From Octopus sinensis (Eukaryota), in assembly GCF_006345805.1 (NCBI RefSeq), contig NC_043013.1, positions 8,990,001 through 9,054,000 of the forward strand: 64,000 nucleotides of DNA, given 5' to 3'. This document shows positions 3,374 through 25,570 of the stretch, piece after piece; position 1 is the stretch's first letter, and every line of letters starts with the position of its first letter. A program made the translations under genes and the position numbers. The notes under the pieces were generated by a model. The model was not told the origin of the DNA. It saw nothing but the letters and a program-made list of their open reading frames with translations, and did no database searches.

Positions 3374-3408
<35 letters not shown>

Positions 3409-4550: not shown

Positions 4551-4968
4551 AGTTAAGTTAAGTTAAGTTAACTTTTTGGCTCAAAAAGCAAGGCCATGTA
4601 GGGGGACATGGAGTTATGTACAGGGAGGGTGTTCATGCAAAGAGTTCAGGCCATTTCTGGTCAAGAGAGACTTTGAACCGAGCGGTCGTCAGCATCTTCA
4701 CTCTCTTGTCCGGCAGCTTATTCCATGGATCTGCAACCCGGACGGAGAAAGCCCCCTCTCCTTCGGTTGAGATGAAATTGTCGCAGATAGAGCTTTTCGG
4801 AGTGACCCCGCAGCCGACGCTCTGGAGCAGGAGTGAAGAACAGCTCTTTCAAGAGGTTACACTTTCCGCTTATGATGTTGTGAGCAAGAATGAGATCACC
4901 ACGGCATCGTCGTTTTTCTAGAGAATAAAATTCGAGCATCTTCAGCCTTTCTTCATAAGACATATGTT
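4551..4968 (-). mobile_element. CR1/L2-group LINE 3' fragment with (TAACT)n tail
   Basis: ORF 4718-4963 SYEERLKMLEFYSLEKRRCRGDLILAHNII...RLRGHSEKL is typical of the post-RT C-terminus; pentamer tail at 4551-4572. Confidence 0.8.
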
Positions 4969-5373
4969 TGATATCATAACTGGTCAGATATCATAACTGG
5001 TCAGATTTATAATATTGGTTTCAAATTTTCTCACAAGACCAGTGGTTTCAAGGAAGGCAGTCAGTTGTTTACATCAAACCCAGCACTCAACTTGTACTTA
5101 TTTTTTTAACCCCCAAAAAGATGGAAAACAAAGTTGGCCACTGCAGCATTCAAACTCAGAACGTGAAGACAGATGAGATGTCACTAACCCAGCATTTCTC
5201 AACCGGGGTTTCGCAAGAAAGAGTGAGATAAGCTAATGCTAATTTCATGATCACAATATTACTATTCATGCACAACATATTATTGGTTATTGTAATATTG
5301 TAATATAGACTTCATCCTATCTTACCTATTATGTTATCAAAAAATTATAACAACGATATATATATATTATATT

Positions 5374-5785
5374 TGTAGTGACGCTACTGTGTAAGTTTCA
5401 GCGCACATGCGCAGAATTGGATTACTTTCAGTTGGCCACCAGAAGTTTCCTCATGCGCATGCGCAGGAACTGCAACCCGAAAACGTGACCACTGAATCGG
5501 TCTTTCTGGCAGAGCAGCGCTAGCGATCGGACGTGACTCGACTTCTCTCAGCGAACACCGTATCTTCTTGGCTCACACGAGTGAACATCGTAAACAGTCC
5601 TGTGGATTCGGCTGCCGGTTTCCCCACAAGAAATACATATGTATATGTTTTACCTGTGAACCACCGAATAAACTACTATTGTTGTTATTGAAGACAGCCT
5701 GACTTTGATTCCATTTCTTCAACTTGTATGTGACGAGATCAGATCGGACACCCCTCCAGTGTTCCTGAACTCTCATCCTGTTACA
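5374..5785. mobile_element. Probable solo LTR (412 bp)
   Basis: TGTAG...TTACA termini, 4-bp TATT on both sides (low complexity, weak), CpG-rich body unlike its surroundings, AATAAA at 5667-5672. Confidence 0.55.
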
Positions 5786-6097
5786 TATTCTTTTCTACTC
5801 TAGGCACAAGGCCCAGAATTTTTTGGGAAAGGGACCAGTCAATTAGATTGACCTCAGTATGCAACTGGTACTTAATTCATTGACCCTGAAAGGATGAAAG
5901 GCAAAGTCGAACTTGGTAGAATTTGAACTCGGAATATAAAGACAGACAAAATACCACAAAGCATTTTGCCTGGCATCCTAACGATTCTGCCAGCTCGCTG
6001 CCTTTATATTTATGATATTAACCACATGAACTACAATGAAAATATATGAGAAAGATATACATAATTTGTTTTGTGCAGGGGTTCCTAAAGACATGTA

Positions 6098-6570
6098 CCG
6101 TAAATCCTCAAGTATAGCTTGCCCTTGAGTATAATACGCAGGGGATTTTTAGGGGGCTGTACCACTGAAAAACCTAATACACACCCCTTCTCTAACTTGA
6201 ACGTGTGTAATTAAGCCAGTAGCACCTAGTCGAACAAATACTTCAGCACATGCGTAATACAATAATGGTGATGTTCTTAACTGTTATATGGGAATGTAAA
6301 TATGTTTGCAAATTATTTTTGTTACACGTCATTCTGTGTTCTGAATACCTTTATTTTAATATGACTTCATTGCTTTCAGGCTTAGCTTAAGGTATTTTCA
6401 CACCCGACATCACAAAATGCGTCTGAATAAACATTGCCAGACAGCAAATAGAGACTCAGACATTGCTTAGAAAATAATTTTTCATTTTTAACCTCGTATA
6501 TAGTACACACTCGGGATTTTGACCTTTAAATTTTGGGAAAAAAATGCGGATTATACTTGAGGATTTACGG
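6098..6570. mobile_element. Tc1/mariner-superfamily (Tc2/pogo-like) MITE
   Basis: Perfect 19-bp TIR CCGTAAATCCTCAAGTATA / TATACTTGAGGATTTACGG; TA on the left, TG on the right. Confidence 0.8.
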
Positions 6571-6661
6571 TGATTTATTTTAAGTGTTACGTAAGGGTAA
6601 AAAGGTTAAGAAACACTGCTCTAATCATTTCGCCTAGCATGCTAATGTTTCTACCAGATTG

Positions 6662-7789
6662 TTGACATAGCTGTTTCAGCCTTTTTGAATCCATAATTAG
6701 TTTCATAGCTGTCTACAACCAGAAATATCTGAGGGTTTCTTCCCACACTTATCTTTACTTCTACATCACTACTCCAGTCATATCATTTCTTATTATCTCC
6801 CTTCTCTATCTTGAGCAAGAGCTTATGCCCAAATCATCAAATTATTTATCACTTCTTAATTCTTCTTTACTGCATTAAACTAATACTTTATATTGTGTAC
6901 ACATATTTTTTTCATTGTTTTGTTTAATTCCTGATACCTTTAAACTAGGTTTTGAATAGTTTACTTTCATTAGATATCTTATTCCAAATAAAGTTCCAGC
7001 TCATTAAATTTGTGAGTAGCAAGATAAGTGTTTCTCAAATAGCCATGGATAGGTGCAGGGGGCATCTATGTGGACCTATGTGTTAAGACGTTTACTTTCC
7101 AACTACATGGTCTTGAGTTCAGTCTCACTGCATGGAAACTTAGGAAATTGTTTTCCAGTATAGCCCCAGGGCCAACCAAAAAACACTGCAAGTAGACTTG
7201 GTAGATGGAAACTGAAAGAAACCAGCAGCACATATTTGTGTGTATGTGTGTGTGTGTGTCTAAGTGTGGGTGTATGTGTGTGTGTGTGTGTGTATGCATA
7301 TATGTTTGCATGCATATGAATGTGTATGTGTAATTGTCTCTTTGCCTTGACTTTGTCTTTTCTGTTAAAAACTAATACTGCTATTTTTTAATAAACATTT
7401 AGTAATCTTTATGTTTTTTTAATGGATAAAAGTTCCTAGATCAAATCTAATGTGATACAAATATAGGAATAAGATATCTAATGAAAGTAAACTATTCAAA
7501 ACCTAGTGTAAAGGTAACAGGAATTAAACATAACAATGAAAAAAATATGTGTACACAATATAAAGTATTAGTTTAATGCAGTAAAGAAGAATTAAGAAGA
7601 GATAAACAATTCGATGATTTGGGCATAAGTTCTTGTTCAAGATAGAGAAGGGAGATAATAAGAAATGATATGACTGGAGTAGTGATGTAGAAGTAAAGAT
7701 AAGTGTGGGAAGAAACCTTCAGATATTTCTGGTTGTAGACAGCTATGAAACTAATTATGGATTCAAAAAGGCTGAAACAGCTATGTCAA
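6662..7789. repeat. 324-bp inverted repeat pair (6662-6985 / 7466-7789), about 97% identical, probably Penelope pLTR-derived
   Basis: Hand alignment gives about 9 substitutions and no indels; spacer 480 bp. Confidence 0.9.
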
Positions 7790-8135
7790 AACAGATAACA
7801 ATAATAGTAATAATAATCTTTTCTGCTTTAAGCACAAGGCCTGAAATTTTCGGGGAGGGGGACAGTCGTTTACATGAACCCCAGTATTCAGCTGGTACTT
7901 ATTTTATCAATCCTGAAAGGATGAAAGGCAAAGTCAATCTTGGTAGAATTTGAACTCAGAACATAAGGACAGACATTTAAAAACTTACAGTGTGGCTTAG
8001 AATGCGTTGCTTACCCATGCTTTTTAATTGAACTGAATTAATACTTTTTTTTAAGTATCACCATTATAGGTATTTATACTCTGATGCAATTAAGAAATCA
8101 ACTCATAAATAAACGAAACCTTTGAATCTATTAGT

Positions 8136-8170
<35 letters not shown>

Positions 8171-8528
8171 ACTGTCTTTCACTGATAGTGCACATGCACT
8201 TTTATACAATTTAGGACAGTTGATCTGCCATCCCACAGGGAAGTCAGGATTTCACCACAACAACAACAACAACAATAATAATAATAATAATAATAATACT
8301 GAATAATAATAATAATAATAATAATACTTTCTATGTAATCTCAAGTTTTAAAACAAACATAATTTTCGTTTATTTTTTTTTAGGCATTCACTAGTACAAC
8401 ACTAAATACAAAACCAAATATATGGCACACTAGGCATAACATCACGAACTTCCAACCTGTTGTCTCTTGAGGTCTCTGGGTGAGACTTGGAGCCAACTTG
8501 TACAAATGTAAAGCAAAAGTCAAACATA

Positions 8529-8583
<55 letters not shown>

Positions 8584-8587
<4 letters not shown>

Positions 8588-9141
8588 GCCCTAATGCAGT
8601 GCCAGGCAGTGGCTCTCATGGCTTCTGATCTTAACTGATTGGAAGTGTTATCATGTACATTGTTTTGTCTTGGTATAAAAGATGGGCTACAGCAAATATT
8701 CTGCTCAATACCACAGATTTGCTTGTCAGTTGTTTGACCTTAACCAGTTGAGCATGTCCCTTAGTGGCTGACGATATGTGCATCTCTGATCACGAGCAGA
8801 AGTAGTGGGGGAGCATCATAGCCATGTGTTGAGAGGGATTCTTTGGGGTTTGAATAGTTCACCTCTGGAAACATGGGTGGTTCTTTCAACATCCTTAAAC
8901 AATCCTTATTCAGGGACCTTTTGAGCGGGATGGGCTACTCAACCTGAAGAAAATTCTAACTGGGCCCCACCTGCAAGGTCATGTGCTGTTTATCTTGATA
9001 TGAGATCACCATGTCGCGCACATATAGTTGTGATGCATGTGCCTGGTGTACCTTTATCAGACGGGTAGTCATGATGGGTATATTGGGCTTCGTATATTTT
9101 ACCCCAGTGTCACTTTGATGGCATGCTCTGCTCTCTCACTC
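8584..9141 (+). mobile_element. About 560-bp non-coding retroposon flanked by (AAT)n
   Basis: Other copies at 10146-10706(+), 13861-14047(+, 5' truncated), 37779-38326(-) and a 28-bp 3' tip at 9831-9858. All end ctcactc-(aat)n. Confidence 0.8.
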
Positions 9142-9464
9142 AATAATAATAATAATAATGATGATGGACTCTCCCATCAAAGATGATGTATGTGTGTTCA
9201 GCTTTTGCCAAACAGCTTGTACAAATGGTTTGTTTACAGAGATGAAATGTATGCACTGTACATTAGTTCACTCCCTCCATTAAATCAGAATTGCTTCAGG
9301 TGTCAGACTGATTGCAGAGAAACATGAGATGGAGTGTTTTGCTCAAGAACACAATGCCCCGCCTGGTCTAAGAATTGAAACCATGGTTTCACAATCGTGA
9401 GTGCAACATCCTAACCACTAGGACATGTGTCCTCAATAATGATAATGATAATAATAATAACAAC

Positions 9465-9495
<31 letters not shown>

Positions 9496-9497
<2 letters not shown>

Positions 9498-9742
9498 TCC
9501 TATCATAGTAGGTGCATTAGGCATGATAAAAAAATATTCAGACAAATACATAACAAAAACACCAGGACTTACAAACACATATAACATACAGAAAATTGCA
9601 CTACTAGGCACTGCACACATCCTACGCAGAACACTTTCCATACAATAACCATCAGAGCATCACAACAAATCACAGCACATACCCAAGGCACACAGAGCTG
9701 CGCTCGGTAGTGAAGTGAAAGCACGCTATAAAAATAAAACTA

Positions 9743-9745
<3 letters not shown>
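9496..9745 (+). mobile_element. R4/Dong-like (RLE-type) non-LTR retrotransposon 3' fragment in an (AAT)n tract
   Basis: IPIIVGALGMIKK...IQKIALLGTAHILRRTLSIQ* resembles the R4/Dong C-terminus. The 3' UTR ends actactg-(aat)n and recurs at about 38355-38460(-). Confidence 0.75.
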
Positions 9746-9819
<74 letters not shown>

Positions 9820-9858
9820 TAATAATAATAATGGCATGCACTGCTCTCTCTCTCACTC

Positions 9859-9892
<34 letters not shown>

Positions 9893-9910
9893 TGTGCAAT
9901 TTTTTCTTAC

Positions 9911-9979
9911 ATGTTCAGCAGCAACTTGAGCTATTTCTAATAATCGGAGTTTGCCATTATATTCTACCAATGTTCCACC
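9911..9979 (-). CDS. UGP2: UDP-glucose pyrophosphorylase exon (GGTLVEYNGKLRLLEIAQVAAEH)
   Basis: GGTL..Y.GKLRL.EIAQV motif, ctctttttcag acceptor, gtaaga donor, 69 nt, phase 0/0. Confidence 0.97.
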
Positions 9980-10076
9980 CTGAAAAAGAGAGAAATATAT
10001 ATAAAAAAAATACATTATGAGGATAAGAAGTAAAAACGTTCATGCTACTAGTGCTACCCCCTTCTCTGAGTAAATA

Positions 10077-10140
<64 letters not shown>

Positions 10141-10706
10141 GTGATAAATGCCCTGATGCAGTACCAGGCAGTGGTTCTCATAGCTTCTGATCTTAACTGA
10201 TTGGAAGTGTTATCATGTACATTGTTTTGTCTTGGTATAAAAGATGGGCTACAGCAAATATTCTACTCAATACCACAGATTTTCTTGTCAGTTGTTTGAC
10301 CATAAACAGTTGACCATGTCCTTTGGTGACTGATGATATGTGCATCTCTGATCACGAGCAGAAGTAGTGGGGGAGCATCATAGCCTTGTGTTGAGAGGGA
10401 TTCTTTGGGGTTTGGATAATTCACCTTTGGAAACATGGGTGTTTTGTTCATCATCCTTAAACAACCCTTATTCAGGGACCTTTTGAGCAAGATGGACTAC
10501 TCAACCTGAACAAAATTTTAACTGGGCTCCACCTATAAGGTTATGTGCTGTTTATCTTGATATGAGATCACCATGTCATGCACAAATGGTTGTGATGCAT
10601 GTGCCCAGTGTACCTTTATCAGATGATGGCTAGTCATGATGGGTGTACTGGCTTTTGTATATTTTACCCCAATGTCACTTTGATTGAATGCACTGCTCTC
10701 TCACTC

Positions 10707-10748
<42 letters not shown>

Positions 10749-10994
10749 TATGATGATGATAATGATAGAGGAGGTAGAAAAAAAAGAAAAGTAAGAAGAA
10801 AAGATTAAGAAGAAAATTGAGAAGAAACGAATGAAAGGAGGGAGGAGGAGGCACAGGGGAAGGAGGAGGAGGATTATAGTTTTCATTGAAAAACACATGA
10901 TCCTTAATTTATTGATTCTTTGAGCAGACAAATAATATAAGGGTTGCTGAGTTATGACAACATCAAAAAAGGGCCAAACTGATAATATACAAAC

Positions 10995-11083
10995 CTTAAT
11001 GTCTGCTCTTGTCTTATCTGTAACTTCCATTACAAATTCTGGTGCTTCACCATTCTGGCGCTTTATAAGAGATTTCAAAATAT
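10995..11083 (-). CDS. UGP2: UDP-glucose pyrophosphorylase exon (H-ILKSLIKRQNGEAPEFVMEVTDKTRADIK)
   Basis: EFVMEVT.KTRAD.K motif, preceded by AC acceptor, gtttgt donor, 89 nt, phase 1/0. Confidence 0.96.
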
Positions 11084-12103
11084 GTTCAGAGAGTTAAGGA
11101 AGAAAATCTTTACCAGCAATTCTTAGACCAATAGATAGATAAGTCTACACACATACATACATGCATACATACATGCATACATACATGCATACATACATAC
11201 ATGCATACATACATACATACATACATACATACATACATACATGCATACATACATACACACACATGTTCTTTTACTTGTTTCAGTCATTTGAGACTGTGAC
11301 CATGCTGGAGCACTGCCTTAATGGGTTTTAGGGCCAAGAAATCGACCCCAGGGCTTATTCTTTGTAAGCCTAGTGCTTATTCTATCAGTCTTTTTTTGCT
11401 GAACTGCTAAGTTACAGGGATACACCAGCATCAGTTGAAAAGCAATAGTGGTGGTCGTGGTGGGGATGGTGACAAACACACACACACACACACACATAAA
11501 TATATATATTCACGATGGGCTTCTTTCAGCCTCCATCTACCACATTCACTCACAAGGTTTTGGTCGGCCCAAGGCTATAATACAAGACACCTTCCCAAGG
11601 TGCCACACAGTGGGACTGAAACTGGAACCATGTGGTTGGGAAGCAAGCTTCTTACCACACAGCCACACCTTCACCTATATACATATACATTTTTTATTCA
11701 TTTTGGTCATTAGACTGCAGCTATGCTGGGGCCCTGTGTTAAAGGTCAAATCATAAAAAAAGACCCCACCCCCAATATTTATCTTTTTCTAAGCTTCGTA
11801 CTTATTCTTTTAGTCACTTTTGGCCAAACCATCAACTTACGTGGATGTAAACAAACCAATACCAGTTGTCAATTGATAGTTGGGGACAAACACAAGGCAT
11901 ACACATATAGATATATATAATAATAAAAACATTGTGTACAGTGCTCAGGTGCACTACAACTCATCTAAAGTGTATGTATAATCAGGTGTAGTTTCGGCGT
12001 ATTTCGGAAAGCATGAGGGCCTTAAAGGATGCAGTGTCATGGCAGTCAACAACTGACGCAGGCAGTTTGTTCCATGCTTCAGCAACTCTGAGCGTGAAAA
12101 AAT

Positions 12104-12470
12104 GGGTTGTCCGGAAAGTTCCTGCCGATTTTTAAAGGAAAGTAAAAGGTCAATAAATACTTGCCATTACATTTTTTATCAACCAAATATGAACCATTTT
12201 GTTGCACAATGTGTCTCCATCTTTCCTTTAACTTGAAAATACCTTCTTCCCAGAATTGAAGTGGTTTCATGGCAAAGAATTCATCAAGGTATCTTTTTAT
12301 GTCATCCAAGGAATTGAAATTTTTACCAGTAGACTATTCTGCAGAGACCTGAATAAGTGGAAATCTGAAGGAGCAATATCTAGTGAATATGGAGGGTGGG
12401 GTAACATATCCCAGCCGAGCTGCAGCAATTTTTGTCTGGTTCCCAAAGCATCAAGTGCTGAAAATGAACA
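12104..12470 (-). mobile_element. Mariner transposase 3' relic with terminal repeat
   Basis: LGWDMLPHPPYSLDIAPSDFHLFRSLQN and, after a frameshift, DDIKRYLDEFFAMKPLQFWEEGIFKLKERWRHIVQQNGSY. Confidence 0.85.
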
Positions 12471-12856
12471 ACCCAATATATATATAGACAATAGGGTTCT
12501 TTCAGTTTCCATCTACCAGATCCACTTGCAAGGCTTTGGTTGGCCCAGGGCTGTGGTAGAAGATACTTGCTGAAGGTGTCACTGGGTGGGATTGAACCCA
12601 AGGCCATATTGTTGGGAAGCAAACTTCTTGCCACACAGCCTTACACTTGTGCCTAGTGACCGAGATCTTTGGCAATACGTGGTGCTTGAGAAGACCTGTC
12701 AAACCAAGTGAAATTGTAGTTGTGGCCAATCCTAGTGTCACGTAACTGGCACCTATGCGAGTGGCACATAAAAGGCACTCGTTACACTCTTGGAGTCACT
12801 GGTGTTAGGAAGGGCATCCAGTGGTAGAGACCATACTGAATCAGATTGGAACTTGT

Positions 12857-13160
12857 GGAGGCACATGGCCTAGTGGTTAGAGCAGTGGACTCACAGTCAA
12901 GGGATCGTGGGTTCGAATCTCAGACCGGGTGATGTGTGTGTTTATGAGCAAAAACACCTAAGCTCCACGTGACTCCAGCAGAAGGTAATGGCAAAATTCT
13001 GCTGACTCTTTCGCCACAACTTTCTTCCACTCTTTCCTCCTGCATCTTGCAGCTCACCTGCGACGGACCGGCATTCCATCCAGGTGGGGAACCTATATGC
13101 CAAGAAACCGGGAAACCGGCCCTTATGAGCCAGGCATGGCTCGAGAAGGAACAAACAACA
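12857..13160 (+). mobile_element. Third tRNA-derived SINE family (ggaggcacatggcctagtggttagagc head)
   Basis: A box tggcctagtgg, B box ggttcgaatct. Related copies at about 34722-34995 and 46868-47165. Confidence 0.75.
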
Positions 13161-13329
13161 AGATTGGAACTTGGTGCAGCTCTCCAGCTAACCAGTTTCA
13201 GCCAGACAACCTGACTTTTGATGAACAGTCAATGGCATTGAAGAGAGTAAAGAGTAAAGTTGCATTTGAGAAAATGTTAGCTGACTTGGAGCACTAGAAG
13301 TCATCAGAATATTGGGAAAGAGTTACCTG

Positions 13330-14063
13330 TATCATGATAATTCGTTACAGGTATGAAAACGCCAGCATCATAACTGCTGCTCAATGCTTATGATCACAAA
13401 GTTGTAAGGCATAACATGGGTATCATGAAAACCAAATTTCCCCAAGTTGTGATGGTCTTTGGGTGTGTCCCCAGTGAAATGCCCCACACCTCTTAACCCT
13501 TTTGTTACCGTATTTATTTTGAGATGCTCTGTGTTTCTTTCAATTAATTATAAATATAACTAAGAATTTAGTAAAATAACTTAATTATCATTAACCTAGT
13601 ATTAGGAACATAAATTGTGACTAAGGTTTGATGGAAGATTTTAATTCAAAACTTATGAAAATAAGACAATTCTACTACAGAGCCAGAGGCAGTTTCAGCC
13701 AGGTTGGTATTGAAAGGGTTAATAGGGCCTTAGGCTCAATTAAGACATCTATGTGAAGCTGCTGGAAACTATCATCAAACCATGACTAGAGAGAGTTGCT
13801 GCTGGAAGGCCATATGTGTAGCTACATGATTCAGTCCCTTACCATACCCCTAGAAAAAGTAACTGGACCCCACCTGCAAGGTCATGTACTGTTTATCTTG
13901 ATATGAGATCACCATGTCACGTGCATATGGTTGTGATGCATGTGCCCGGTGTACCCTTATCAGACGATGGCTAGTCATGATGGGTGTACTGGCTTTTGCA
14001 TATTTTATCCCAATGTCACTTTGATTGAATGCACTGCTCTCTCACTCAATAATAATAATAATG

Positions 14064-14119
<56 letters not shown>

Positions 14120-14490
14120 TATGATGATGATAATGATAGGGGAGGTAGAAAACGACTTTACCAGCCCCAACTTTTGATTTCTTGATTCCCCCAACTGTAA
14201 TCTTATGGATTGCCATGTGGGATGTGGTTGAGGAAGACACCAACTGCTCTACCTCAACACTAAGGCCAAGATGATGGCGAAGATCAAGGTGTTTGAATAA
14301 CTACCCGAAGGGTACAGCAAGGAATGCATACACCAAGTCATGGAACCATCATGAAGCCATCGTAGTGGAAGCTGAGGGTTGCTACTTTTAGTATACTTGG
14401 TGTTTCTCAGCCATAATCTAGTTGATATTTTTTGGATTTTTAAAAACGCATTTATTTTCTTGGATGGTATATTGCTTTCTTTTCCTTTAA
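13330..14490 (+). mobile_element. Degraded maT/DD37D-like (Tc1-mariner) transposase relic, split by later insertions
   Basis: MKTKFPQVVMVFGCVPSE at 13425 and DSPNCNLMDCHV near 14184. Confidence 0.5.
13497..13718. mobile_element. piggyBac-like MITE (222 bp) with TTAA TSD
   Basis: TTAA-CCCTTTTGTTACC...GGTATTGAAAGGG-TTAA. Confidence 0.85.
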
Positions 14491-14508
14491 TGCAAACTGC
14501 ATAAAACA

Positions 14509-14571
<63 letters not shown>

Positions 14572-14718
14572 ATGTAGACAGACAAACATATAGATAGACA
14601 GAATAATGAGAATAAAATGAATGGACATTTCAGTGTATTAATAGATGAAACAAGTGAAAGATGGAAAAAGAAAAACGGAAAAGATTTTATTTTATCATTA
14701 TGTTACTATATGTAAGAA

Positions 14719-15101
14719 CTAGCAGTATCACCCGGTGTTGCTCGGGTTTGTTTCAACCCTTTAGAATTGGAATTTTTGAAAAATAAAAATTTTGCATTAT
14801 GTAGCTTGTTATTCTCTTTAAGTGAACATTTTCCTGGTTGAAATACACCGAAAAATGGCGACACAGCAGTAAAAAAATCGTAAAAAATAGGGATTTGCAT
14901 AGAGAAAAAGCACCTTTCTGATGTAAATAATTTTAGGTCTTCACATGGTCCGATTTGAATTTTTCCTTCTACGGAAGGAAGAGCAAGCCCATACACTCAA
15001 TTTTGGTCAACTTGCACCGCAGGGTCTTGGAGGAGATAGTGTTAGTTGAAGGCTACCAAACCTGCCATACACAGACAACTTCAGCTTTATACATATAGAG
15101 A
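14719..15101 (-). mobile_element. Non-autonomous Helitron
   Basis: Minus strand A|TC start, subterminal hairpin cccgagcaacaccggg, CTAG|T end. Confidence 0.8.
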
Positions 15102-16567
15102 TTTAAAACAATTAGAACTTTTGTGCCAAATTCTGATTTTTACTGTCATAAATACCATCTCATCGTCTACTGCTTTTCAGTGCCTGAATCAATATCTCTT
15201 TCCACCAATTACATTCGTTTCACATCAATTTCTACAAGTTGAATAATATCATTTTTCAATCTGTTAATCATCATCATCATCATCATTGTTTAACGTCCGT
15301 TTTCCATGCTGGCATGGGTTGGACAGTTTGACTGGGGACTGGCAAGCCAGGAGGCCTCATCAGGCTCCAATCTGATCTGGCAAGGTTTCTACAGCTTGAT
15401 GCCCTTCCTAATGCCAACCACTCCTAGAGTGTAGTGTGTGCTTTTTACATGCCATCGGCACATGAGCCAGTCAGGCGGCACTGGCATCGGCCACATTTGG
15501 ATGGTGCTTTTTACGTGCTACTGGCACAGGAGCCAGTCAGAAGGGATGGGGGCTGGCATCAACCATGTTCGGATGGTACTTTTTTCATGCCACCGGCACA
15601 GGGAGCCAGTCTGGCAGTGGAATTTTTTTTTTTCCACAATGCGGTAAAAAGCTTGCTTCTCAACCATATGGTTTTAGGTTCAGTCTAACTTCATGGAACC
15701 TTGAGCAAGTCTCTTTTGCTACAGCTTAGAGCTAACCAAACCCTTGTGAGTAGATTTGGCAGTGGGAAGCTGAAGGAAACTTGTTGTACCTGTGAGAGAG
15801 AGAAAGAGAGAGAGAGTGTGTGTGTGGGTGGGTGTGTGCACACGCGCGTGTGTGTGTGTGTGTGTGTGTGCGTGTGTGTCTGTGCGTGTGTGTGTGTGTT
15901 TGCATCTATGTGTTTGTCCGCTACAATTACTTGACAATCAGCATTGGGTTACTTACATCCCTGTGACTTAGCAGTTCACCAAAAATAACTGATAGAATAA
16001 GTACCAATGATACTTCAGCATTTAAACCAGCAATATCCAACCAAAAAATTCTGCCTGTTTTATGTTCAAACTAACCAGATTTGGCCTCTTACACTTACCC
16101 TACAATGTCATTCTAAAAATAAACAATCACATCGTTGAAATCTCAAAACTAGGAGATAAGGCAGGATTAATTCAAAACAATGAATAAATAAGCATTGGAT
16201 TTGACAAAATAGTCTAAATGCAGTGGAAGAGAAGAAATCCAACATTCTCAGTCCCTGGACCACACTTTTGCTCACTGCTATTGGGCAGAGATGGTTATTC
16301 GCAAGTGGAAGCCCTGTGAGTCAGTGAGGTTGTTCCAGTGCCTCTCCCTCACTTTAAAGTAACACCTTTTCTATTTGATCCACTGAAAACATGAGGCCGA
16401 CTAACAGCCCTTTTTTAGATATTTCTTTGTTGTGAGGAAGAGGAAAGACATGATGATTTAGGCAGTGCTCTTCATCAAGGTAAAAGAAAGAAAAACCCAA
16501 ACAACATTGAAATGAAATTGTCAGCATTCAAAATTTAGATGTTTCTGGAGAATTATACTGGACTATC

Positions 16568-16779
16568 CTGTTGTGTCTGGGGAGAGTCATTTTCTTTTTG
16601 TGCCTTATAATGTAACACACTCACCGGTAAAATTTCCACTTATTTCTTATTTTTATTTTCCTAAAATTTTCGTTGCGTCTTGCAACCTTTTCAATAAGAA
16701 ATAAATGGAAATTTTACCAGTGAGTGTGTTAAATAATTATAAGGCACAAAAAGAAAATGACTCTCCCCAGACACAACAG
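16568..16779. repeat. Asymmetric palindromic element, arms about 80 bp
   Basis: ctgttgtgtctggggagagtcattttctttttgtgccttataat... and its reverse complement; same family as 35721-35987. Confidence 0.85.
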
Positions 16780-17964
16780 AATATGCTTCAACACACGAAC
16801 TTACTTAAAGAATCTTGCAAACCAAATCCAAACACGAAATACTGGACTATATCGTCTCTTAAACCATATATTCAAATATATACAGACACAAATAATTGTC
16901 ATGAGCAATATCATGTAAGTAATTTGGTACGCATTTGTAAACAATACAGTTGAAAATGGTCAGAATGCTGAATGGTTTAAGACACAGTATAACATCATCA
17001 ACGACAGCAATAGCTTGCCAATCAACTGTGTCACTACATTGTGTTAGTCAGCATCATCATCATCATCATCATCATTATCATTTAACATCCGCTTTCCATG
17101 TTGGTATGGGTTGAACGGTTTGACAGTTGCCTGCACCAAACTCCACTGTCTGTTTTGGCATGGTTTTTACAGCTGGATACCCTTCCTGACATCAACCACT
17201 TTATACAGTGGATTGGGTGCTTTTTATGTGGCACCAGCACTGGTGAGGTCTGTTTTGGTATGGTTTTTACATCTGGATGCTCTTCCAAACACCAACCACT
17301 TTACAGTGTAGACTGAGTACTTTTTACATGGCACCAGTACTGACAAGGTCACCAAGCAACTCACAACCCCCACCAGTGCTGGTTCCACATAAAAAAAGCA
17401 TCCAGTTCACACTGTAAATTGGCTAGCATTTGGAAGGACATCCAAATGTAAAGATCATGTCAAAACAGTGAACTAATTCCATGTTGAAACGCAGAACATC
17501 CATTGATGATGTCTTCACCAAAGTGATGACACCTTATTAGAGAACACTTACAAAGAACTTCTTTCAAAGAAAACGACAAAGAACAGATGTTATAAAGGCC
17601 ATCTTTTAAACTTCTTACTATTGCCATTGTTTGATTTAAACTGTACTGAATAAAAAAGCAGAAGAAAATCTATTGTTATATTTCAAGAAGGGCATTTAAA
17701 ATTTTTTTTTGCCAAATAGTCAGAGGCACTATATATCCATTCTTCACTTCAGCTTTATTATTATTCTTATTTTAGCATCCTTTGAGTAAAATATTTCATC
17801 ACACATCCTGTGACCTCTTCAGTGACTCTCCATCCCACGTGTCTCCTCCTGTCCTGCTTAGTCCATTCTCTATGTTTTTATGATTCCAATAATGATGATG
17901 ATGATGATATATAGATATGTGGCAAGGAACTTTGAATAGCAAAATAAAAGTATGCATATTTACC

Positions 17965-17996
<32 letters not shown>

Positions 17997-19331
17997 ACAT
18001 ATCTTTTATCTTTTACTTGTTTCAGTTACTTGACTGCAGCCATGCTAGGGCACTGCCTTGAAGGGTTTTTTAAGTCAAACAAGTTGACCCACAGGATTTT
18101 TTTTTCTTTAAAGCCTGGTTTCTTATTCTATTGGTCTCTTTTACTGACCCACTAAGTTATGGGGATGTAAACACACCAATGCTGGTTGTCAAGCAGTAGT
18201 GGAAGTCAAACACAGACACACACACAGACACACACACAGACACACACACACACACACATATATATAATGGGTTTCTTTCAGTTTCTTATTTCTTTACTAC
18301 CCACAAGGGGCTAAACACAGAGGGGACAAACAAGGACAGACAGAGGAATTAAGTTGATTACATCAACCCCAGTGCATAACTGGTACTTAATTTATCAACC
18401 CCGAAAGGATGAAAGGCAAATTCAACCTCGGTGGAATTTGAACTCAGAACATAACGGCAGACCAAATACTGCTAAGCATTTCGCCTGGCGTGCTAATGTT
18501 TCTGCCAACCAAATCCACTCACAAAGATTTGGTTGGCCCAAGGTCATAGTAGAATATACTTACCCAAGGTGGGAATGAACTCGGAACCATGTGGTTGGGA
18601 AGCAAACATTTTACCAACCAGCCACAGCTGCACCTATATAACAAGCTTCTTTCAGTTTCTGTCTGTTAAATCCCCTCAAAAGGCTTTGGTCCAAATCCCC
18701 TCACAAGGCCATAGTAGAAGACATTTTCCCAAGGTGTCACATAGTGGGACTGAACCTAGAACCATGTGGTTAGGAAGCAAGCTTCTAAGCACCTCACTTT
18801 GCAGTCACATGGTTTCCAGTTCAGTCCCCCTAAACAGCAGCTTAGGCAAATGTCTTCTATTATAACCACAGGTTAACTAATAGCTTGTGAACAAATTTGG
18901 TAGTCAGAAACTGTGTGGAAGCCTGTTGTACGTATAAATGTGTGTGTGTGTATGTGCTTATCTACTACCATCACTTGATTACTGGTGTCGGTTTGTTTAC
19001 ATCCCTGTAACTTTAACAGTGTAGCAGAAGTAACAGTCTTACAAAAATAAGTATGGGGTCTAATTTGTTCAACTGAAGTAAACCCTTCAAGGCGGTGCTC
19101 CAGCATGACCACAGTCCAATTACTGAACAAGCAACAGATAAATGAGATAGATATACACACACAGAGTAGACCTTGTTATAACAGAGTACCAAATTTCAAC
19201 CCAAGGCTATGGCTGAAGAACCAAAGTACTGTGGAATAGGTTTGAACCTGGAAGCGCAATGTTTCTAAGAAAAACTTCTTAACTATACCATAGTACGGTT
19301 TGTACCCATATATGGTAAAAAAAAAGGATAT

Positions 19332-19465
19332 GTAGATCAACGGTAGCTCCTAAATTATCGATATTTGATAGAAACATATATTTGCGACCAGCATTGAGAA
19401 ACTTCTGTAGAAAACCGCATTTGTAAAAACATTCATAGACATCTCCATGACCAGGAGGGTACCAG
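19332..19465 (-). CDS. UGP2: UDP-glucose pyrophosphorylase exon (WYPPGHGDVYECFYKCGFLQKFLNAGRKYMFLSNIDNLGATVDL-H)
   Basis: WYPPGHGD and SNIDNLGA motifs, ctgtttcag acceptor. Ends at a non-GT donor ATATCCTTT (U12). 134 nt, phase 2/1. Confidence 0.97.
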
Positions 19466-19489
19466 CTGAAACAGATATAAAAAGGGTAG

Positions 19490-19885
19490 TAGTAATAGCG
19501 GTAGTGGTGGTGGTGGTGGTGGTGCCAGTGTTGGCATTGATGCAGTGGCAGCAGTGATGATGATGATGATGATGAAGATGGTAGTGATGGTGGTTGCTGT
19601 CGTCGTTGTCATCATAATGGTAGTGATGGTGGTGGTGTTGGTGGTGGTTGTGGTGGTCGTTGCCATTGACATCATTGGTTGTAGTAGTGGTGATGGTGGT
19701 AGCAGTAGTGGCAGTGATCATGATGATGGTGGTGGTGGTGGTGGTGGTCATGGTGGTTGTGGTCTATGTTGTTGTTGTCATGACAACGATGATGGTGGTA
19801 GTAGTAATTGTAGTGGCAATCATAATGATGACGATGATGGTGATGATGATGATGGTGATGGTGATGACGATGACGATATATCTAT
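19490..19885. repeat. Compound trinucleotide microsatellite (GGT/GAT/GTT/AGT)n
   Basis: Fills most of the 561-nt intron 19466-20026. Confidence 0.9.
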
Positions 19886-20026
19886 GTACGTCAGTGTTAA
19901 ATATTTCTGAGAAATAATCGGAAATAGAGCAACAACAACAATGACAGCAATAAGGTATTAATGACAACAAACAACACAATCACAACAATCAACAGCAACA
20001 AGTACAAATATTTCAAGATTACAAAC

Positions 20027-20092
20027 CTCTGTGGATCATCATCTTTAGATTTCGGTAAAGGTAACAGGGATTCTTTGATGATTCTTGGGAAC
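20027..20092 (-). CDS. UGP2: UDP-glucose pyrophosphorylase exon (R-FPRIIKESLLPLPKSKDDDPQ-S)
   Basis: [YF]PRI.KESLLP motif, caaaatag acceptor, gtttgt donor, 66 nt, phase 2/2. Confidence 0.95.
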
Positions 20093-20306
20093 CTATTTTG
20101 AAAAAAAAAAGGAAAGAAGAATAATAAAAGTCAGAGGTAAAAAGATTGAAATGCATTTTGTAATTGATGTCTATGACTATATGGTTTGGCAGCTTGCTTC
20201 TTAGAATGAAATGTTGGGCAAGTGGTTTTTATTATAGCGCTTGGGCCAACAAAAGCCTTGTGAGTAGGTTTGCAGAAACAGAAACTGAAAGAAGTCCATT
20301 GTGCAT

Positions 20307-20346
<40 letters not shown>

Positions 20347-20914
20347 AAAAATGGGTTTGTATGACATATTGTTTCCCATTATTCTTTAAAAAAAGAAACT
20401 TTTGGAAGACTCGGAATAATCTATGCAATATTATCAATTGGTCTCATAGGATTTATTGTTTGAGCACATCATATATTCACATATATTTGTATGATTGTGT
20501 AATAAGGGATATATATTATTCAAAGGAATTCCAACTCTGTTTTTTTATGTTTTATTTATATTCTTTATAATATTAATGTAGAATATAGAATATATAGTAT
20601 AAATAGTATATATAGTAAAATGAAATGAAGTATTGATTGTCTTATTGAATAGATGAAATGTTGAATATAAAATATTAGGGCACTAGTATAGTTTCATGTG
20701 TTATAGCAGTCTTCAAGGTCCCAGGTTGTGACAGGTGTGTTGCATAGATATGTATATACGTATAAGGAGAGATGACCACTAAGTGGACATCCAATATGCT
20801 AGAAATCGATCACCTATGATTTAACCACAAAGAAAAGAATGTCCTCTAGAAAAATTCAGCAAACACCAGAACATAAGCGGGTAAGACAAATGAAAATATA
20901 CAAAATAAAGAATT

Positions 20915-20983
20915 AATTGTAGACCGGTTTCGCTATTAACTACTTCACTTACGTAAAAACATCCATGGCTCATCAGTATGATC
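20915..20983 (-). ncRNA. Minimal hammerhead ribozyme motif, intact core with eroded stems
   Basis: Minus strand: cata CTGATGA GCcat...atagc GAAA CCGG TC tacaat. Palindromic stem III ACCGGT and GUC triplet; stems I and II have mismatches. Confidence 0.7.
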
Positions 20984-21561
20984 GTTCTAATTTAATATAA
21001 TTTGCAGAACTATATATACAACAGCAATAGTATATTCAATATAATATTCAATATAATATTCTATTTATCGCCCTCATTATTGTGTGCGTGTGTGTGTATA
21101 TATATATATATATATACACATACGTACATACATATGTATATGTGTATACATGTGTGTGCATATACATATATATAAGCAATATATATAAGCAATATATATA
21201 TGCAATATATATATATACATATATATATGCAATATGTATATAAGCAATTTTACATTAATCTGAGGTGTTACTCTATACTTTTTAAGGTTACCAAATTAAT
21301 CATTCTTAAACAAGAGTATTGTTGACTGGGATTTTGAAGCTTAAGAATAATAGACGCATATATATATATGAAAAACACGAAAATATTTTTGTAAATTAAA
21401 TTTAAATGTTGAAGTGAATCTAACGGTTTTTGTGTGTTTTTAAATGGCTTATAAACACCTTCCATACTGCAATTGTTTTTGTTTCAGCACACGATCTAAG
21501 ATCAGGTCACTTGCTATGCAAGTACATCTCCGTAATATATATATATATATATACATACATT

Positions 21562-21620
<59 letters not shown>

Positions 21621-21703
21621 AATATTAGGGAATAAATCCAAATTTACAGGGGAAAATCAGATTTAGGATTGAATCTAATTTTATAGTAAAATATTATATT
21701 ATG

Positions 21704-21863
21704 TTATATTAGAAACAAAACCACTATTATGCAAATCAAACAAAGAAAGTCTTAAGCCAATACATAAAATAATTGTTAAATTTAATTTGTATAAATTATT
21801 TTATGTATTGGCTTAAGACTTTCTTTGTTTGATTTGCATAATAGTGGTTTTGTTTCTAATATA

Positions 21864-21864
<1 letters not shown>
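21704..21864. repeat. Perfect 71-bp inverted repeat with 19-nt spacer
   Basis: 21704-21774 is the exact reverse complement of 21794-21864. Confidence 0.92.
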
Positions 21865-21931
<67 letters not shown>

Positions 21932-22744
21932 TATACACATACACACACATTTATATACACTGTGTGTGTGTGTTTGTGTGTGTATTAGTGTCTTATTGCT
22001 GTGACATCCTGTAATGGTTGTAAACAAGTGTTACCAAGTAAACTGTGTCCATTGTTTCTGACCTTCCAGGAAAACCTGTTTGGAACATGGGGAAATATTT
22101 TGAAAAGGGAGAAATATTACCTTTTTAGGAAACGGGAGGATTGGCAGCAGAAAGGGCATCTGGCCATAGAAAATACACATCAATAAATTCCATCCAACTC
22201 ATGCAAACATGGAAAAGTGCATGTTAAAACAATAATGAAGATGATGAGTAACGAGTAAACTTAATTAACACTGATGGAAGATGTGGACGACTGATATGAG
22301 TAAAATAAGACCTTGTCGTTGTTATTTTAAAAATGAAACACACAAAATCAATACAACCAGCCAATAATGAAACTTTAACCTCCACAGAATAAAATTCGTG
22401 AATCTCTAAAAACCAAATTAATCAGTTAATACAAGCTGACTTGCGAAAATCTCTAGAATCAGTCTCAATACACAAGTGCAATAAAACCACATATTGAATC
22501 ACGGCACCACAATGATCTAGGGATTAACAAATCAAAGAGAGGATCAGCTCACACAGCAAGCTACTCAGCATGCACTCTAAGTAACATCTTGAAACAACAA
22601 TCAACTTATTTCTTTTTGTCTGCAAAAGTCTCAATGACAAGAAGGACATAAAGAATATTCTGGCTATAAAAATTTTATTCCGGCAGTTTACTTTTTTTTT
22701 TTTACTTATAGATTAGTAGTCAGTGTCAGCTGTTTGTGGAATAT

Positions 22745-23154
22745 CTCTCTTACTCTTTTACTCTTTTACTCGTTTCAGTCATTTGACTGCGGCCATGCTG
22801 GAGCGCCGCCTTTTAGTCGAGCAACTCGACCCCAGGACTTATTCTTTTGTAAGCCCAGTACTTATTCTATCGGTCTCTTTTGCCGAACCACTAAGTAAAC
22901 GGGGACATAAACACACCAGCATCGGTTGTCAAGCAATGCTAGGGGGACAAACACAGACACACAAACACATATATATATATATACAAATATACGACGGGCT
23001 TCTTTCAGTTTCCGTCTACCAAATCGACTCACAAGGCATTGGTCGGCCTGAGGCTATAGTAGAAGACACTTGCCCAAGGTGCCACGCAGTAGGACTGAAC
23101 CTGGAACCATGTGGTTGGTAAACAAGCTACTTACCACACAGCCACTCCTGCGCC
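22745..23154 (-). mobile_element. Dominant SINE, full-length copy
   Basis: Same head, body and tail as 587-991. Confidence 0.85.
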
Positions 23155-24331
23155 TATGCATTTTGACAAAATGGATCAGGATGTCTTCGGTTGTTGGTCT
23201 ACCTGATTAGAACTAGCTTAGGGCTAAACGACAACAACCCCTTCCTCCACCCTTCACTATAGTCAATGGCCTTGAGTTTTAGATTCTGGACTATTGATCA
23301 CATAGTTCTATCGCTATAACATACTTAATGCACACAACATTAAATAAAAGCTAAGATGAAATAATGAATCATTAATTGATATACTAATTTAATTATTTCA
23401 ACAAGTCTAGACAAGTTCCATTTATGTTAATAGTTAATTTTTTTTTAATGTACTCTAACATCCAATAGGCCAACATTAACTTTGTTTTTCTTGCAGATGG
23501 TGTCTCTGAGTAATTCATTCTTTAAAATATTGAATCAGCTACACCGACCAGCGAACTTCTCTTTTGTATATTTACTTAATAATTCATGTGACAGTGTCTG
23601 CCCGATGGTTTCAACATTGATTTCATGATCACAAGGTGATGGGTTCAATTCCTGGATAGGGCAAGGTACTTCATTTCACATTGTCCTCCATCTACTCAAT
23701 ACTCCAAAGTTCTGTAGCATCCTCCCTTTCATTGTAGCTGTACACATATTCAATGTTTTCTTGGATCAAGAGTAGGCAGACCAAGATAGCATATAAGTCT
23801 GTTTACAAATACCAACTACTTAAAACAATTACCTAAAGCATAGCACATTATCAAGTCATCCTTGTTTGTGAATGTTGGCTATGATATTTAGCCGTCCTTT
23901 TGTCACTACTATAGCAAATGCATTGAAAAAAGTTTTTTACTGATGAGACCATAATAAGGCTGAAGCATGTCCTATACTTCTTTTATCTTTTACTTGTTTC
24001 AGCCACTGGACTGTAGCTAATGCTGGGACCCCACCTTGAAAATATTAACCAAATAAATCATCCCAAGCTCTTAGTTTCTTCTTAAGTCTGATACTTAGTC
24101 TATCAGTCTCTTTCGCCTAATTGCAGGGACATAAACAAACAAACAAACAGTTGGTTGTGAAATGGTGTTGTGGAACAAACACAACAACACTTACATACAT
24201 AAATACATACACACACATACATAGGTAGGTATGTATGTGTGTGTGTGTATATATTTTTATTTTTATTTATTTTATTTTTATCTAGTTTCAGCTCACGAGC
24301 TGTGACCATGCTGGGGCACTGCCATTTGCTG

Positions 24332-24376
<45 letters not shown>

Positions 24377-24401
24377 GATACAAACAGACAGACAGACAGA
24401 C

Positions 24402-24448
<47 letters not shown>

Positions 24449-24654
24449 CTGATGTATATGTAACTGTTAGTTATGGCTAGTCACAAAGTTACAATAGATA
24501 TCATGTCTATTATTGCTCTTAGCAATATATATTGCAAAAATAGATGTGAAGGCAATAGTAACTTTCTGACCATAAACCAATGACTACATAAAATATTACA
24601 GCTAAAACACATTGTTTAGGATGTGTTTTTCTTCTGATTTATGTATAACTGACC

Positions 24655-24717
<63 letters not shown>

Positions 24718-24801
24718 CTTCCATTTTCCTGAGCGCCTAATAATAATAATACTGTAATTGTTCCACGTGTTGTTGTTTTTTCTGTTTTCCCGTTTGTATT
24801 A

Positions 24802-24864
<63 letters not shown>

Positions 24865-25329
24865 ACGACTCTTTAAGTTCTGAGTTCAAATCACGCCAAG
24901 GTCAAATTTGTCTTTTATCCTTCCGGGTTCAATAAAGCAAAATTATAATGGCGGAGATTTAAAATAGCTATCCTTTGAAGCCCCTTGTCTCAGAGTAAAG
25001 GGAAAAGGGTATTTTTTCCTCTCTTCATTTTTTGGGTAATCTTATATTTCATACTATGGAAATTACGAAAGAATTTTTTATCCAAAGATATAATGTATTT
25101 TTACATTTTGCTCTCTCACCTCCTGTCAAATCCATACTCGTTTCCTTTTCTATGAAGGAAGGATAGCTATATCAAAACTCCAGCGTTACATTCAACCACT
25201 GTAGCTATATATAAATTTCTATAATGCAATTGTGAGATGAATGAAATTATTAACAGAAGAGTATTTACTGCTTGCATATTTTCTTTATTTTTATTTTTTA
25301 CATTCTATTTCCCACTTGCTGCACTATTG

Positions 25330-25570
25330 TCCCTCTCCTCCTTCACAATGCAAATGTACCCTGTCGCTGAGCTCTCCTCACTTATGAGTTTATCACCAAA
25401 AGCAACATGATATCAATTCCTCACACACCGTATCCGCTTGTGGACTTCCATCTCTTCCTCAAAAATGAAAATGCAGCTCAAAGGTTGCTGTTTTAACGCC
25501 GTTGTCACTTGCTTACAGAAAACGACTTCCAGGTCAGATTCCAAGAGTGGTAGGCATGGAGATGATGTTA
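25330..25570 (+). mobile_element. Degraded mariner relic
   Basis: caccgtat...gacttccatctcttcctcaaaaatgaaaatgcagctcaaagg resembles PPYSPDLAP.DFHLF.KMKMQLKG with indels. Confidence 0.5.

What the first reader, a model, noticed from the sequence alone, without database searches (positions are those of the whole stretch)
11084..19331. 8.2-kb U12-type AT-AC intron in the catalytic core of UGP2
Seen: the exon ending ..GATVDL is followed by ATATCCTTT, and the exon starting ILKSL.. is preceded by TTCCTTAAC-tctctga-AC. No GT-AG solution preserves the frame, and the join gives the conserved VDL-H-IL. Established: ATATCCTT / TCCTTAAC / AC are the minor-spliceosome consensus signals, and AT-AC introns are a very small class that gene predictors often miss. 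Recalled (verify): human UGP2 has one uninterrupted exon across this position. Inference: either an ancestral minor intron lost in vertebrates or a rare gain. It would make UDP-glucose supply dependent on minor-spliceosome activity, and it has tolerated about 8 kb of transposon load with its signals intact.
Basis: partly seen in the sequence, partly recalled or inferred. Interest (0 to 1): 0.82.

Follow-up and report, generated by a model that had tools for sequence, protein, structure and literature searches.

The report
Ancient minor-spliceosome intron in octopus UGP2
The 8.2-kb gap in this octopus UDP-glucose pyrophosphorylase gene is a real AT-AC intron of the rare "minor spliceosome" class, inherited from early bilaterian animals, but it is an ordinary member of a well-known class and public gene models already use it.

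Summary
The window is Octopus sinensis. The minus-strand gene is a UGP2 orthologue, identical to RefSeq XP_029647049.1.

**Signals.** The intron at 19331..11084 (8,248 nt, phase 1) starts ATATCCTTT. It ends TTCCTTAAC-tctctga-AC, with the branch A 11 nt from the 3' end. The seven other introns in the window are GT-AG with pyrimidine tracts.

**Age.** The same codon is split in three other animals:
- Argonauta: an AT-AC U12-type intron.
- Saccoglossus (hemichordate): a GT-AG U12-type intron.
- Centruroides (scorpion): a GTATCCTTT U12-type intron.

A scallop and a lizard have one continuous exon there. So this is an ancestral bilaterian minor intron, switched to the AT-AC subtype in octopods and lost on the scallop and lizard lineages (for vertebrates I tested only a lizard).

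- Frame-preserving GT-AG joins do exist. One is used, wrongly, in an O. vulgaris GenBank model and deletes 11 conserved residues.
- UDP-glucose supply need not depend on minor splicing. Octopuses also carry a slower-evolving UGP2 paralogue. It is intronless in O. vulgaris, and O. sinensis has a close copy whose structure I did not check.

**Intron content.** It is mostly interspersed repeats and microsatellites, plus a decayed mariner remnant.

**Verdict.** A correct call of a routine feature; low interest.

The parts
19332..19465 (-). UGP2 exon E (…SWYPPGHGDVYECFYK…NIDNLGATVDL + first base of the His codon)
   Evidence: Exon model. Preceded by a GT-AG intron (tatctgtttcag|). 100% match to XP_029647049.1.
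19323..19331 (-). U12-type 5' splice site ATATCCTTT (intron positions +1 to +9)
   Evidence: The identical 9-mer is present in Argonauta. GTATCCTTT sits at the same codon in Saccoglossus and Centruroides.
11084..19331 (-). AT-AC minor-class intron, 8,248 nt, phase 1
   Evidence: The orthologous introns are 1,959 nt (Argonauta), 1,940 nt (Saccoglossus) and 108 nt (Centruroides).
11093..11101 (-). U12-type branch-point sequence TTCCTTAAC; the second A (11094) lies 11 nt from the last intron base
   Evidence: Argonauta has TACCTTAAC with identical spacing. Saccoglossus has TTCCTTAAC and Centruroides TTGCTTAAC.
11084..11085 (-). 3' terminal AC of the intron, with no pyrimidine tract before it
10995..11083 (-). 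UGP2 exon F ((H)ILKSLIKRQNGEAPEFVMEVTDKTRADIK), followed by a GT donor
19340..19341 (-). Cryptic GT inside exon E (ACC|GTTGAT). Together with the AG at 11061-11062 it gives a frame-preserving join that deletes VDLHILKSLIK.
   Evidence: The same join pattern is seen in the O. vulgaris model CAI9735618.1.
11061..11062 (-). Cryptic AG inside exon F (ataaAG|CGCCAG)
12184..12443 (-). Decayed mariner-family transposase remnant inside the intron, in two pieces in different frames
   Evidence: PDB sequence hits to SETMAR (7e-09) and Mos1 (1.5e-07) for piece 1, and to Mos1 (8e-07) for piece 2. No Pfam hit.
11146..11261 (.). (TACA)n microsatellite, 45 nt upstream of the branch-point sequence
48641..48727 (-). 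First coding exon of isoform X2 (MSLTRKDSYSGMRNGITRLIKSMESNKQD)
   Evidence: matches the P0001 N-terminus.
37273..37380 (-). Exon A
33967..34149 (-). Exon B (contains the [10 protein letters not shown] loop)
32274..32407 (-). Exon C
20027..20092 (-). Exon D
9911..9979 (-). Exon G
2421..2452 (-). Exon H
319..415 (-). Exon I (the gene continues past the low end of the window)

Best explanation
**What it is.** The 8,248-nt interval 19331..11084 (minus strand) is a U12-dependent (minor-spliceosome) intron of the AT-AC subtype. It lies in the intron-bearing UGP2 gene of Octopus sinensis.

**How it works (inferred from established knowledge of the class, not shown here).**
- The U11/U12 di-snRNP recognises the two rigid signals together. 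U11 pairs with ATATCCTTT and U12 pairs with TTCCTTAAC, bulging the branch adenosine.
- U4atac/U6atac.U5 then joins.
- The 3' site (AC) is chosen by its short distance from the branch point (11 nt), not by a pyrimidine tract.
- Splicing joins C|AT to make the His codon of VDL-H-ILKSL.

**History (shown by comparison).**
- The intron position, phase and U12 character predate the protostome-deuterostome split.
- The subtype is GT-AG-like in a hemichordate and a scorpion, and AT-AC in octopods, so the termini switched.
- The intron was precisely deleted in the scallop and lizard lineages sampled.
- In O. sinensis it has swollen to 8 kb through repeat insertions, while only the short terminal signals stayed fixed.
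For: **Signals and gene model**
- Both signals match the U12 consensus exactly, and the position agrees with the protein homology.
- All seven other introns in the window are GT-AG with pyrimidine tracts.
- The joined protein is 100% identical over 304 aa to RefSeq XP_029647049.1. All four O. sinensis isoforms and the O. bimaculoides models carry VDLHILKSL.

**Conservation in Argonauta hians**
- It has ATATCCTTT...TACCTTAAC-7 nt-AC at the same codon.
- Synonymous sites between the two octopod genes are saturated (pS 0.81) while pN is 0.147. Neutral sequence should therefore have been scrambled, yet these signals survived, and the protein is under purifying selection.

**Conservation outside cephalopods**
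- Saccoglossus: aaca|GTATCCTTT...TTCCTTAAC-13 nt incl. AG|.
- Centruroides: ttaa|GTATCCTTT...TTGCTTAAC-10 nt|.
- Both are in phase 1 of the same codon.

**Absence elsewhere**
- Pecten and Podarcis have one continuous exon across the site.

**Literature**
- Molluscs and arachnids are minor-intron-rich, and O. sinensis has catalogued minor introns (PMC10639083).
- U12-type introns are under-represented in phase 0 (PMC7367187). This one is phase 1.
Against: - No RNA reads were available here, so use of the junction rests on the RefSeq models and on conservation.
- Excision by the minor rather than the major spliceosome is inferred from the sequence signals only.
- Frame-preserving GT-AG alternatives exist and could be used at a low level.
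- The vertebrate loss was checked in one lizard only. The origin before Bilateria was not tested.
Confidence: 0.93

Rival explanations
1. The gap is bridged by the major spliceosome through cryptic GT-AG sites. Donor 19341 or 19305 would pair with acceptor 11060, and the AT-AC signals would be incidental.
For: Such joins keep the frame. An O. vulgaris GenBank protein (CAI9735618.1) has exactly NIDNLGAT|RQNGEAPEF.
Against: - The join deletes or replaces 11 residues (VDLHILKSLIK) that every orthologue keeps.
- The nucleotides coding for them are conserved as coding sequence in Argonauta.
- All RefSeq isoforms use the AT-AC join.
- The cryptic donor GTACAA is weak by eye, and the acceptor ...tcttataaag has little pyrimidine tract.
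Confidence: 0.03
2. The intron is a recent, lineage-specific gain in cephalopods, for example by transposon insertion. The ACATAT repeat at both junctions would be a target-site duplication.
For: - A 6-nt direct repeat ACATAT flanks both junctions.
- The intron is full of mobile-element debris.
Against: - A U12-type intron sits in the same phase of the same codon in a hemichordate and a scorpion.
- Four of the six repeated bases are the intron's own ATAT and the His/Ile codons.
- The repeat shrinks to CATAT in Argonauta and is absent in the other two species.
Confidence: 0.02
3. It is an AT-AC intron removed by the major (U2-type) spliceosome, a rare class that exists.
For: The terminal dinucleotides alone do not define the spliceosome class (PMC10639083).
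Against: - From recall, U2-type AT-AC introns lack the ATATCCTT and TCCTTAAC motifs and do have pyrimidine tracts.
- Here both U12 motifs are perfect, the spacing is 11 nt, and there is no pyrimidine tract.
- The orthologues carry GTATCCTTT.
Confidence: 0.02

Closest known systems
U12-type AT-AC introns, the founding minor-spliceosome class (Hall & Padgett 1994; Tarn & Steitz 1996, as cited in PMC10639083)
   Same: - 5' ATATCCTTT.
- Branch site TTCCTTAAC 10-15 nt from the 3' end.
- AC terminus and no pyrimidine tract.
- Non-zero phase.
- A single such intron among many GT-AG introns in a housekeeping-type gene.
   Different: Nothing structural. The host gene (UGP2) is not on the held human/mouse minor-intron lists, because the vertebrate lineage sampled lacks the intron.
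The orthologous U12-type intron with a GT start in Saccoglossus kowalevskii and Centruroides sculpturatus UGP2
   Same: - Same codon and same phase.
- Same xTATCCTTT 5' motif and TTAAC branch motif.
- Same short distance from branch point to 3' site.
   Different: - The termini are GT-AG (Saccoglossus) and apparently GT-AT (Centruroides), against AT-AC in octopods. This is a subtype switch.
- Lengths are 1,940 nt and 108 nt against 8,248 nt.
Intron-lacking state of the same site in Pecten maximus and Podarcis raffonei UGP2, and in the intronless octopus paralogue
   Same: Identical protein register across the site (VDL-x-IL).
   Different: There is no intron. This is a precise loss in Pecten and Podarcis. 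In the octopus paralogue the whole gene is intronless, so it is probably a retrocopy.

Membership tests
U12-type (minor-spliceosome) intron, AT-AC subtype | 5' splice site matches the consensus RTATCCTTT at +1 to +9 | tested here: met
   ATATCCTTT at 19331..19323, 9 of 9.
U12-type (minor-spliceosome) intron, AT-AC subtype | Branch-point sequence TTCCTTRAY close to the 3' end (about 10-26 nt), with no pyrimidine tract | tested here: met
   TTCCTTAAC at 11101..11093. The branch A is 11 nt from the last intron base and only tctctga intervenes. The distance rule is from recall of the U12 literature.
U12-type (minor-spliceosome) intron, AT-AC subtype | AT...AC termini that give an in-frame, homology-consistent join | tested here: met
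   The join is gapless against human UGP2 and 100% identical to the RefSeq protein.
U12-type (minor-spliceosome) intron, AT-AC subtype | Orthologous introns elsewhere also carry U12 signals | tested here: met
   Argonauta, Saccoglossus and Centruroides.
U12-type (minor-spliceosome) intron, AT-AC subtype | The junction is used in mRNA | tested here: inconclusive
   Indirect only. All O. sinensis and O. bimaculoides RefSeq models carry the join. No reads or transcript contigs for this gene were reachable.
U12-type (minor-spliceosome) intron, AT-AC subtype | Excision depends on U11/U12/U4atac/U6atac | not testable with these tools
   This needs knockdown or in vitro splicing. O. sinensis appears among the species compared for minor-intron conservation in PMC10639083; I infer from this that it has the minor-splicing machinery.
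UTP-glucose-1-phosphate uridylyltransferase (UGP2 / Pfam UDPGP) | Full-length match to the family profile and to solved UGPases | tested here: met
   PF01704 at 4.8e-131. Human UGP2 4r7p/3r2w at 3e-125. The [14 protein letters not shown] and NIDNLGA motifs are present.
UTP-glucose-1-phosphate uridylyltransferase (UGP2 / Pfam UDPGP) | Gene under purifying selection, so not a pseudogene | tested here: met
   pN 0.147 against pS 0.81 over 311 codons compared with Argonauta. All exons are open.
Retrocopy (for the 508-aa octopus paralogue, not the window gene) | An intronless ORF, where the ancestral gene has 12 or more introns | tested here: met
   O. vulgaris L001 has a continuous 1,527-nt ORF that translates to P0004. 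Poly(A) and target-site-duplication hallmarks were not examined in detail. The O. sinensis copy was not fetched.

The most novel reading that the evidence does not exclude
After a cephalopod-wide duplication, the intronless UGP2 copy may have kept the housekeeping role. The ancestral, U12-bearing copy (this window) would then have become a faster-evolving, specialised paralogue whose output is gated by the slow or regulated removal of its single minor intron. If so, it would be a natural paired system: the same enzyme with and without a minor intron in one genome. That pair could be used to test whether minor introns act as rate-limiting expression switches.
Probability: 0.12. Interest if true: 0.45.

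Novelty: new member of a known kind. Interest (0 to 1): 0.2.

Why it matters
- It adds UGP2 to the genes that carried a minor intron in the bilaterian ancestor. It gives a clean example of three things at one site: AT-AC/GT-AG subtype switching, precise loss in a scallop and in a lizard, and persistence of about 20 nt of signal through an 8-kb repeat expansion.
- In practice, it flags a mis-spliced public gene model in O. vulgaris that loses 11 conserved residues because a GT-AG join was forced.
- It changes nothing about how minor splicing is understood. The intronless paralogue removes the suggested metabolic dependence on the minor spliceosome.

Tried and rejected
**Look-ups and searches that gave nothing**
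- Five of the 12 genomic look-ups found nothing on record: Liolophura, Glandiceps, Hipposideros, Amphiura and Owenia. No annelid, chiton, echinoderm or mammal locus could therefore be read.
- A Pfam scan of eight intron ORFs gave nothing. The mariner remnant only showed up against PDB sequences.
- Literature searches for UGP2 or UDP-glucose pyrophosphorylase together with minor intron or U12 found nothing relevant.
- The held supplement of the intronIC paper has no UGP2 entry.
- An Rfam scan found no RNA gene in the intron.
- Motif counts alone are no evidence. They are not above shuffled expectation.

**Ideas rejected**
- The ACATAT junction repeat as a target-site duplication. It shrinks to CATAT in Argonauta and is absent in the other two species that share the intron.
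- A hidden GT-AG exon inside the intron. The join is already gapless against all orthologues, so no extra exon is needed.

**Note on method**
All conclusions rest on tool-returned sequences.
Full report
**What is in the window.**
- The sequence is AT-rich and repeat-dense.
- I used a tblastn probe to locate exons. Reading the junctions by eye then gave nine minus-strand exons, 37380..319, that join into an open 304-aa frame.
- A further coding exon lies at 48727..48641.
- The protein is a UDP-glucose pyrophosphorylase: Pfam UDPGP at 4.8e-131 and human UGP2 structures 4r7p/3r2w at 3e-125.
- It is 100% identical over its whole length to RefSeq XP_029647049.1, 'UTP--glucose-1-phosphate uridylyltransferase isoform X2 [Octopus sinensis]'.
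- The gene runs off the low end of the window.

**The observation.**
- Exon E ends at 19332 (...GAT CTA C).
- The next bases are ATATCCTTT.
- Exon F starts at 11083 (AT ATT TTG AAA TCT CTT).
- Exon F is preceded by TTCCTTAAC-tctctga-AC.
- The intron is 8,248 nt and phase 1.
- The branch adenosine lies 11 nt from the last intron base, and there is no pyrimidine tract.
- The seven other introns in the window are GT-AG with clear pyrimidine tracts.
- The join reads VDL-H-ILKSL and aligns to human UGP2 with no gap.

**Chance.**
- The 8-mers alone are no rarer or commoner than in shuffled sequence.
- What cannot be chance is their placement at both homology-defined exon ends. From the base composition, I estimate the joint probability at about 1e-10.

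**One sub-claim fails.**
- Enumeration finds about 40 open-frame GT/GC-AG joins near the junctions.
- Donor 19341 with acceptor 11060 yields NIDNLGAT|RQNGEAPEF, which drops VDLHILKSLIK.
- That exact pattern appears in the O. vulgaris GenBank protein CAI9735618.1.
- In contrast, all O. sinensis isoforms (X1-X4) and all O. bimaculoides models carry VDLHILKSL.
- So the frame argument is wrong.

**Comparative evidence.** I fetched orthologous loci and mapped their exons. All four introns listed below split the same codon in phase 1.

| Species | Intron at the site | 5' junction | 3' junction |
|---|---|---|---|
| O. sinensis (window) | 8,248 nt | ctac\|ATATCCTTT | TTCCTTAACTCTCTGAAC\|atat |
| Argonauta hians | 1,959 nt | ctcc\|ATATCCTTT | TACCTTAACTTGAAGAAC\|atat |
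| Saccoglossus kowalevskii (hemichordate) | 1,940 nt | aaca\|GTATCCTTT | TTCCTTAACACTCAAACTTTAG\|aaat |
| Centruroides sculpturatus (scorpion) | 108 nt | ttaa\|GTATCCTTT | TTGCTTAACATTTATTTAT\|atat |
| Pecten maximus (scallop) | none | one exon, residues 229-303 | |
| Podarcis raffonei (lizard) | none | one exon, residues 192-291 | |

- The other intron positions are shared widely across these species.
- Between the two octopods, synonymous sites are saturated (pS 0.81) while pN is 0.147.
- Intron sequence beyond the signals is not visibly similar by eye. Retention of the 5' 9-mer, the CCTTAAC core, the 7-nt spacer length and the GAAC end therefore reflects selection on the splicing signals.
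- A U12-type intron at one site in Lophotrochozoa, Ecdysozoa and Deuterostomia dates it to the bilaterian ancestor at the latest.
- It has a GT start in the two outgroups and is AT-AC in octopods, so the subtype switched.
- It was lost precisely in the scallop and lizard lineages.
- UGP2 is absent from the held human/mouse minor-intron tables of Olthof et al. 2019, where the control gene UBL5 is present. This fits a vertebrate loss.

**Mechanism.** This part is inferred from established knowledge of the class and is not shown here.
- U11 pairs with the 5' site and U12 pairs with the branch site, acting as a di-snRNP.
- U6atac replaces U11.
- The 3' AC is selected by its distance from the branch point.
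- If the intron is retained, read-through gives HILFFYHIWVQTVLWYS and then a stop. Unspliced RNA would therefore encode a truncated protein.

**Intron content.**
- 59% of the intron matches other places in the same window, i.e. interspersed repeats.
- There are six microsatellite arrays and one 100-bp tandem duplication.
- One microsatellite, (TACA)29, lies 45 nt from the branch site.
- A frameshifted mariner transposase remnant lies at about 12443..12184 (SETMAR 7e-09 and Mos1 1.5e-07 for the first piece, Mos1 8e-07 for the second).
- The intron is about four times longer than in Argonauta or Saccoglossus and 76 times longer than in the scorpion.

**The functional claim.**
- Octopuses have a second UGP2 of 508 aa.
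- In O. vulgaris it is a single uninterrupted ORF.
- The O. sinensis (XP_029654733.1) and O. bimaculoides copies fall in the same 90% cluster.
- A maximum-likelihood tree places a duplication at the base of a cephalopod clade (support 98/96).
  - The intron-bearing branch is long (0.31 + 0.13).
  - The intronless branch is short (0.074 + 0.023).
- The intronless copy is 75-76% identical to other molluscs, against 69-70% for the window gene.
- UDP-glucose supply in octopus is therefore unlikely to hinge on this minor intron.
- The window gene is still under purifying selection. It may be a specialised paralogue.

**Context and novelty.**
- Minor introns are catalogued genome-wide.
- Larue & Roy 2023 included O. 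sinensis and note that molluscs and arachnids are relatively rich in them (PMC10639083).
- No paper in the library links UGP2 with minor splicing.
- The feature is a correct but routine instance of a known class, and it is already implicit in RefSeq.
- I rate interest 0.2.

Noticed in passing
L001 (O. vulgaris OX597815.1:8468255-8471781), gene 1001-2527: A second octopus UGP2 (508 aa, 71% identical to the window protein) is encoded by one uninterrupted ORF, so it is probably an old retrocopy. It evolves more slowly than the intron-bearing gene. O. sinensis and O. bimaculoides copies sit in the same 90% cluster.
   Followed up: partly
L006 (Lottia gigantea KB203918.1), gene 501-2030: The Lottia UGP2 is also intronless. 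It groups with Patella in the tree, apart from the cephalopod intronless copy, which suggests an independent retrocopy.
   Followed up: partly
Protein P0124 (O. vulgaris CAI9735618.1), equivalent to window 19341/11060: This public gene model forces a GT-AG join (NIDNLGAT|RQNGEAPEF) and loses 11 conserved residues. It looks like an annotation error caused by the AT-AC intron.
   Followed up: yes
L005 (Centruroides), about 19875-19985: If the RefSeq protein is right, the scorpion's U12-type intron ends in ...TTTAT, i.e. GT-AT, a non-canonical 3' terminus. There is no in-frame AG or AC nearby.
   Followed up: partly
window 19327-19334 and 11079-11086 (minus strand): The 6-nt direct repeat ACATAT spans both junctions, and reading through the 5' site also gives H-I-L. 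It is probably a by-product of the ATAT intron start and the His-Ile codons. It is reduced to CATAT in Argonauta and absent in Saccoglossus and Centruroides.
   Followed up: yes
window 52121-52131 (minus strand): ATATCCTTAAC merges the U12 5'-site and branch-site words. It lies upstream of the first coding exon found. It could be chance or part of a 5'-UTR intron.
   Followed up: no
window 32253-32260 (minus strand): TCCTTAAC lies 14 nt inside the GT-AG intron that follows exon C (gtgagtcactgcTTCCTTAAC). It is at the wrong end of the intron to act as a branch site, so it is probably chance.
   Followed up: no
window 45982-46053 (+): Rfam reports a tRNA match (41.9 bits) that ARAGORN does not call. 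It may be a tRNA-derived SINE inside the UGP2 first intron.
   Followed up: partly
window 60484-60846 (minus strand) and 29631-30029 (+): Two ORFs with a GIY-YIG-like motif, resembling Penelope-like element debris. The first scores 21.7 bits against Pfam GIY-YIG, just under the 22.6-bit cut-off. The second has no hit.
   Followed up: partly
L004 (Podarcis) versus the window: The lizard gene lacks four introns that the invertebrates share: D/E, the U12 intron E/F, G/H and H/I. The U12 loss is therefore part of a wider intron loss in that lineage.
   Followed up: partly
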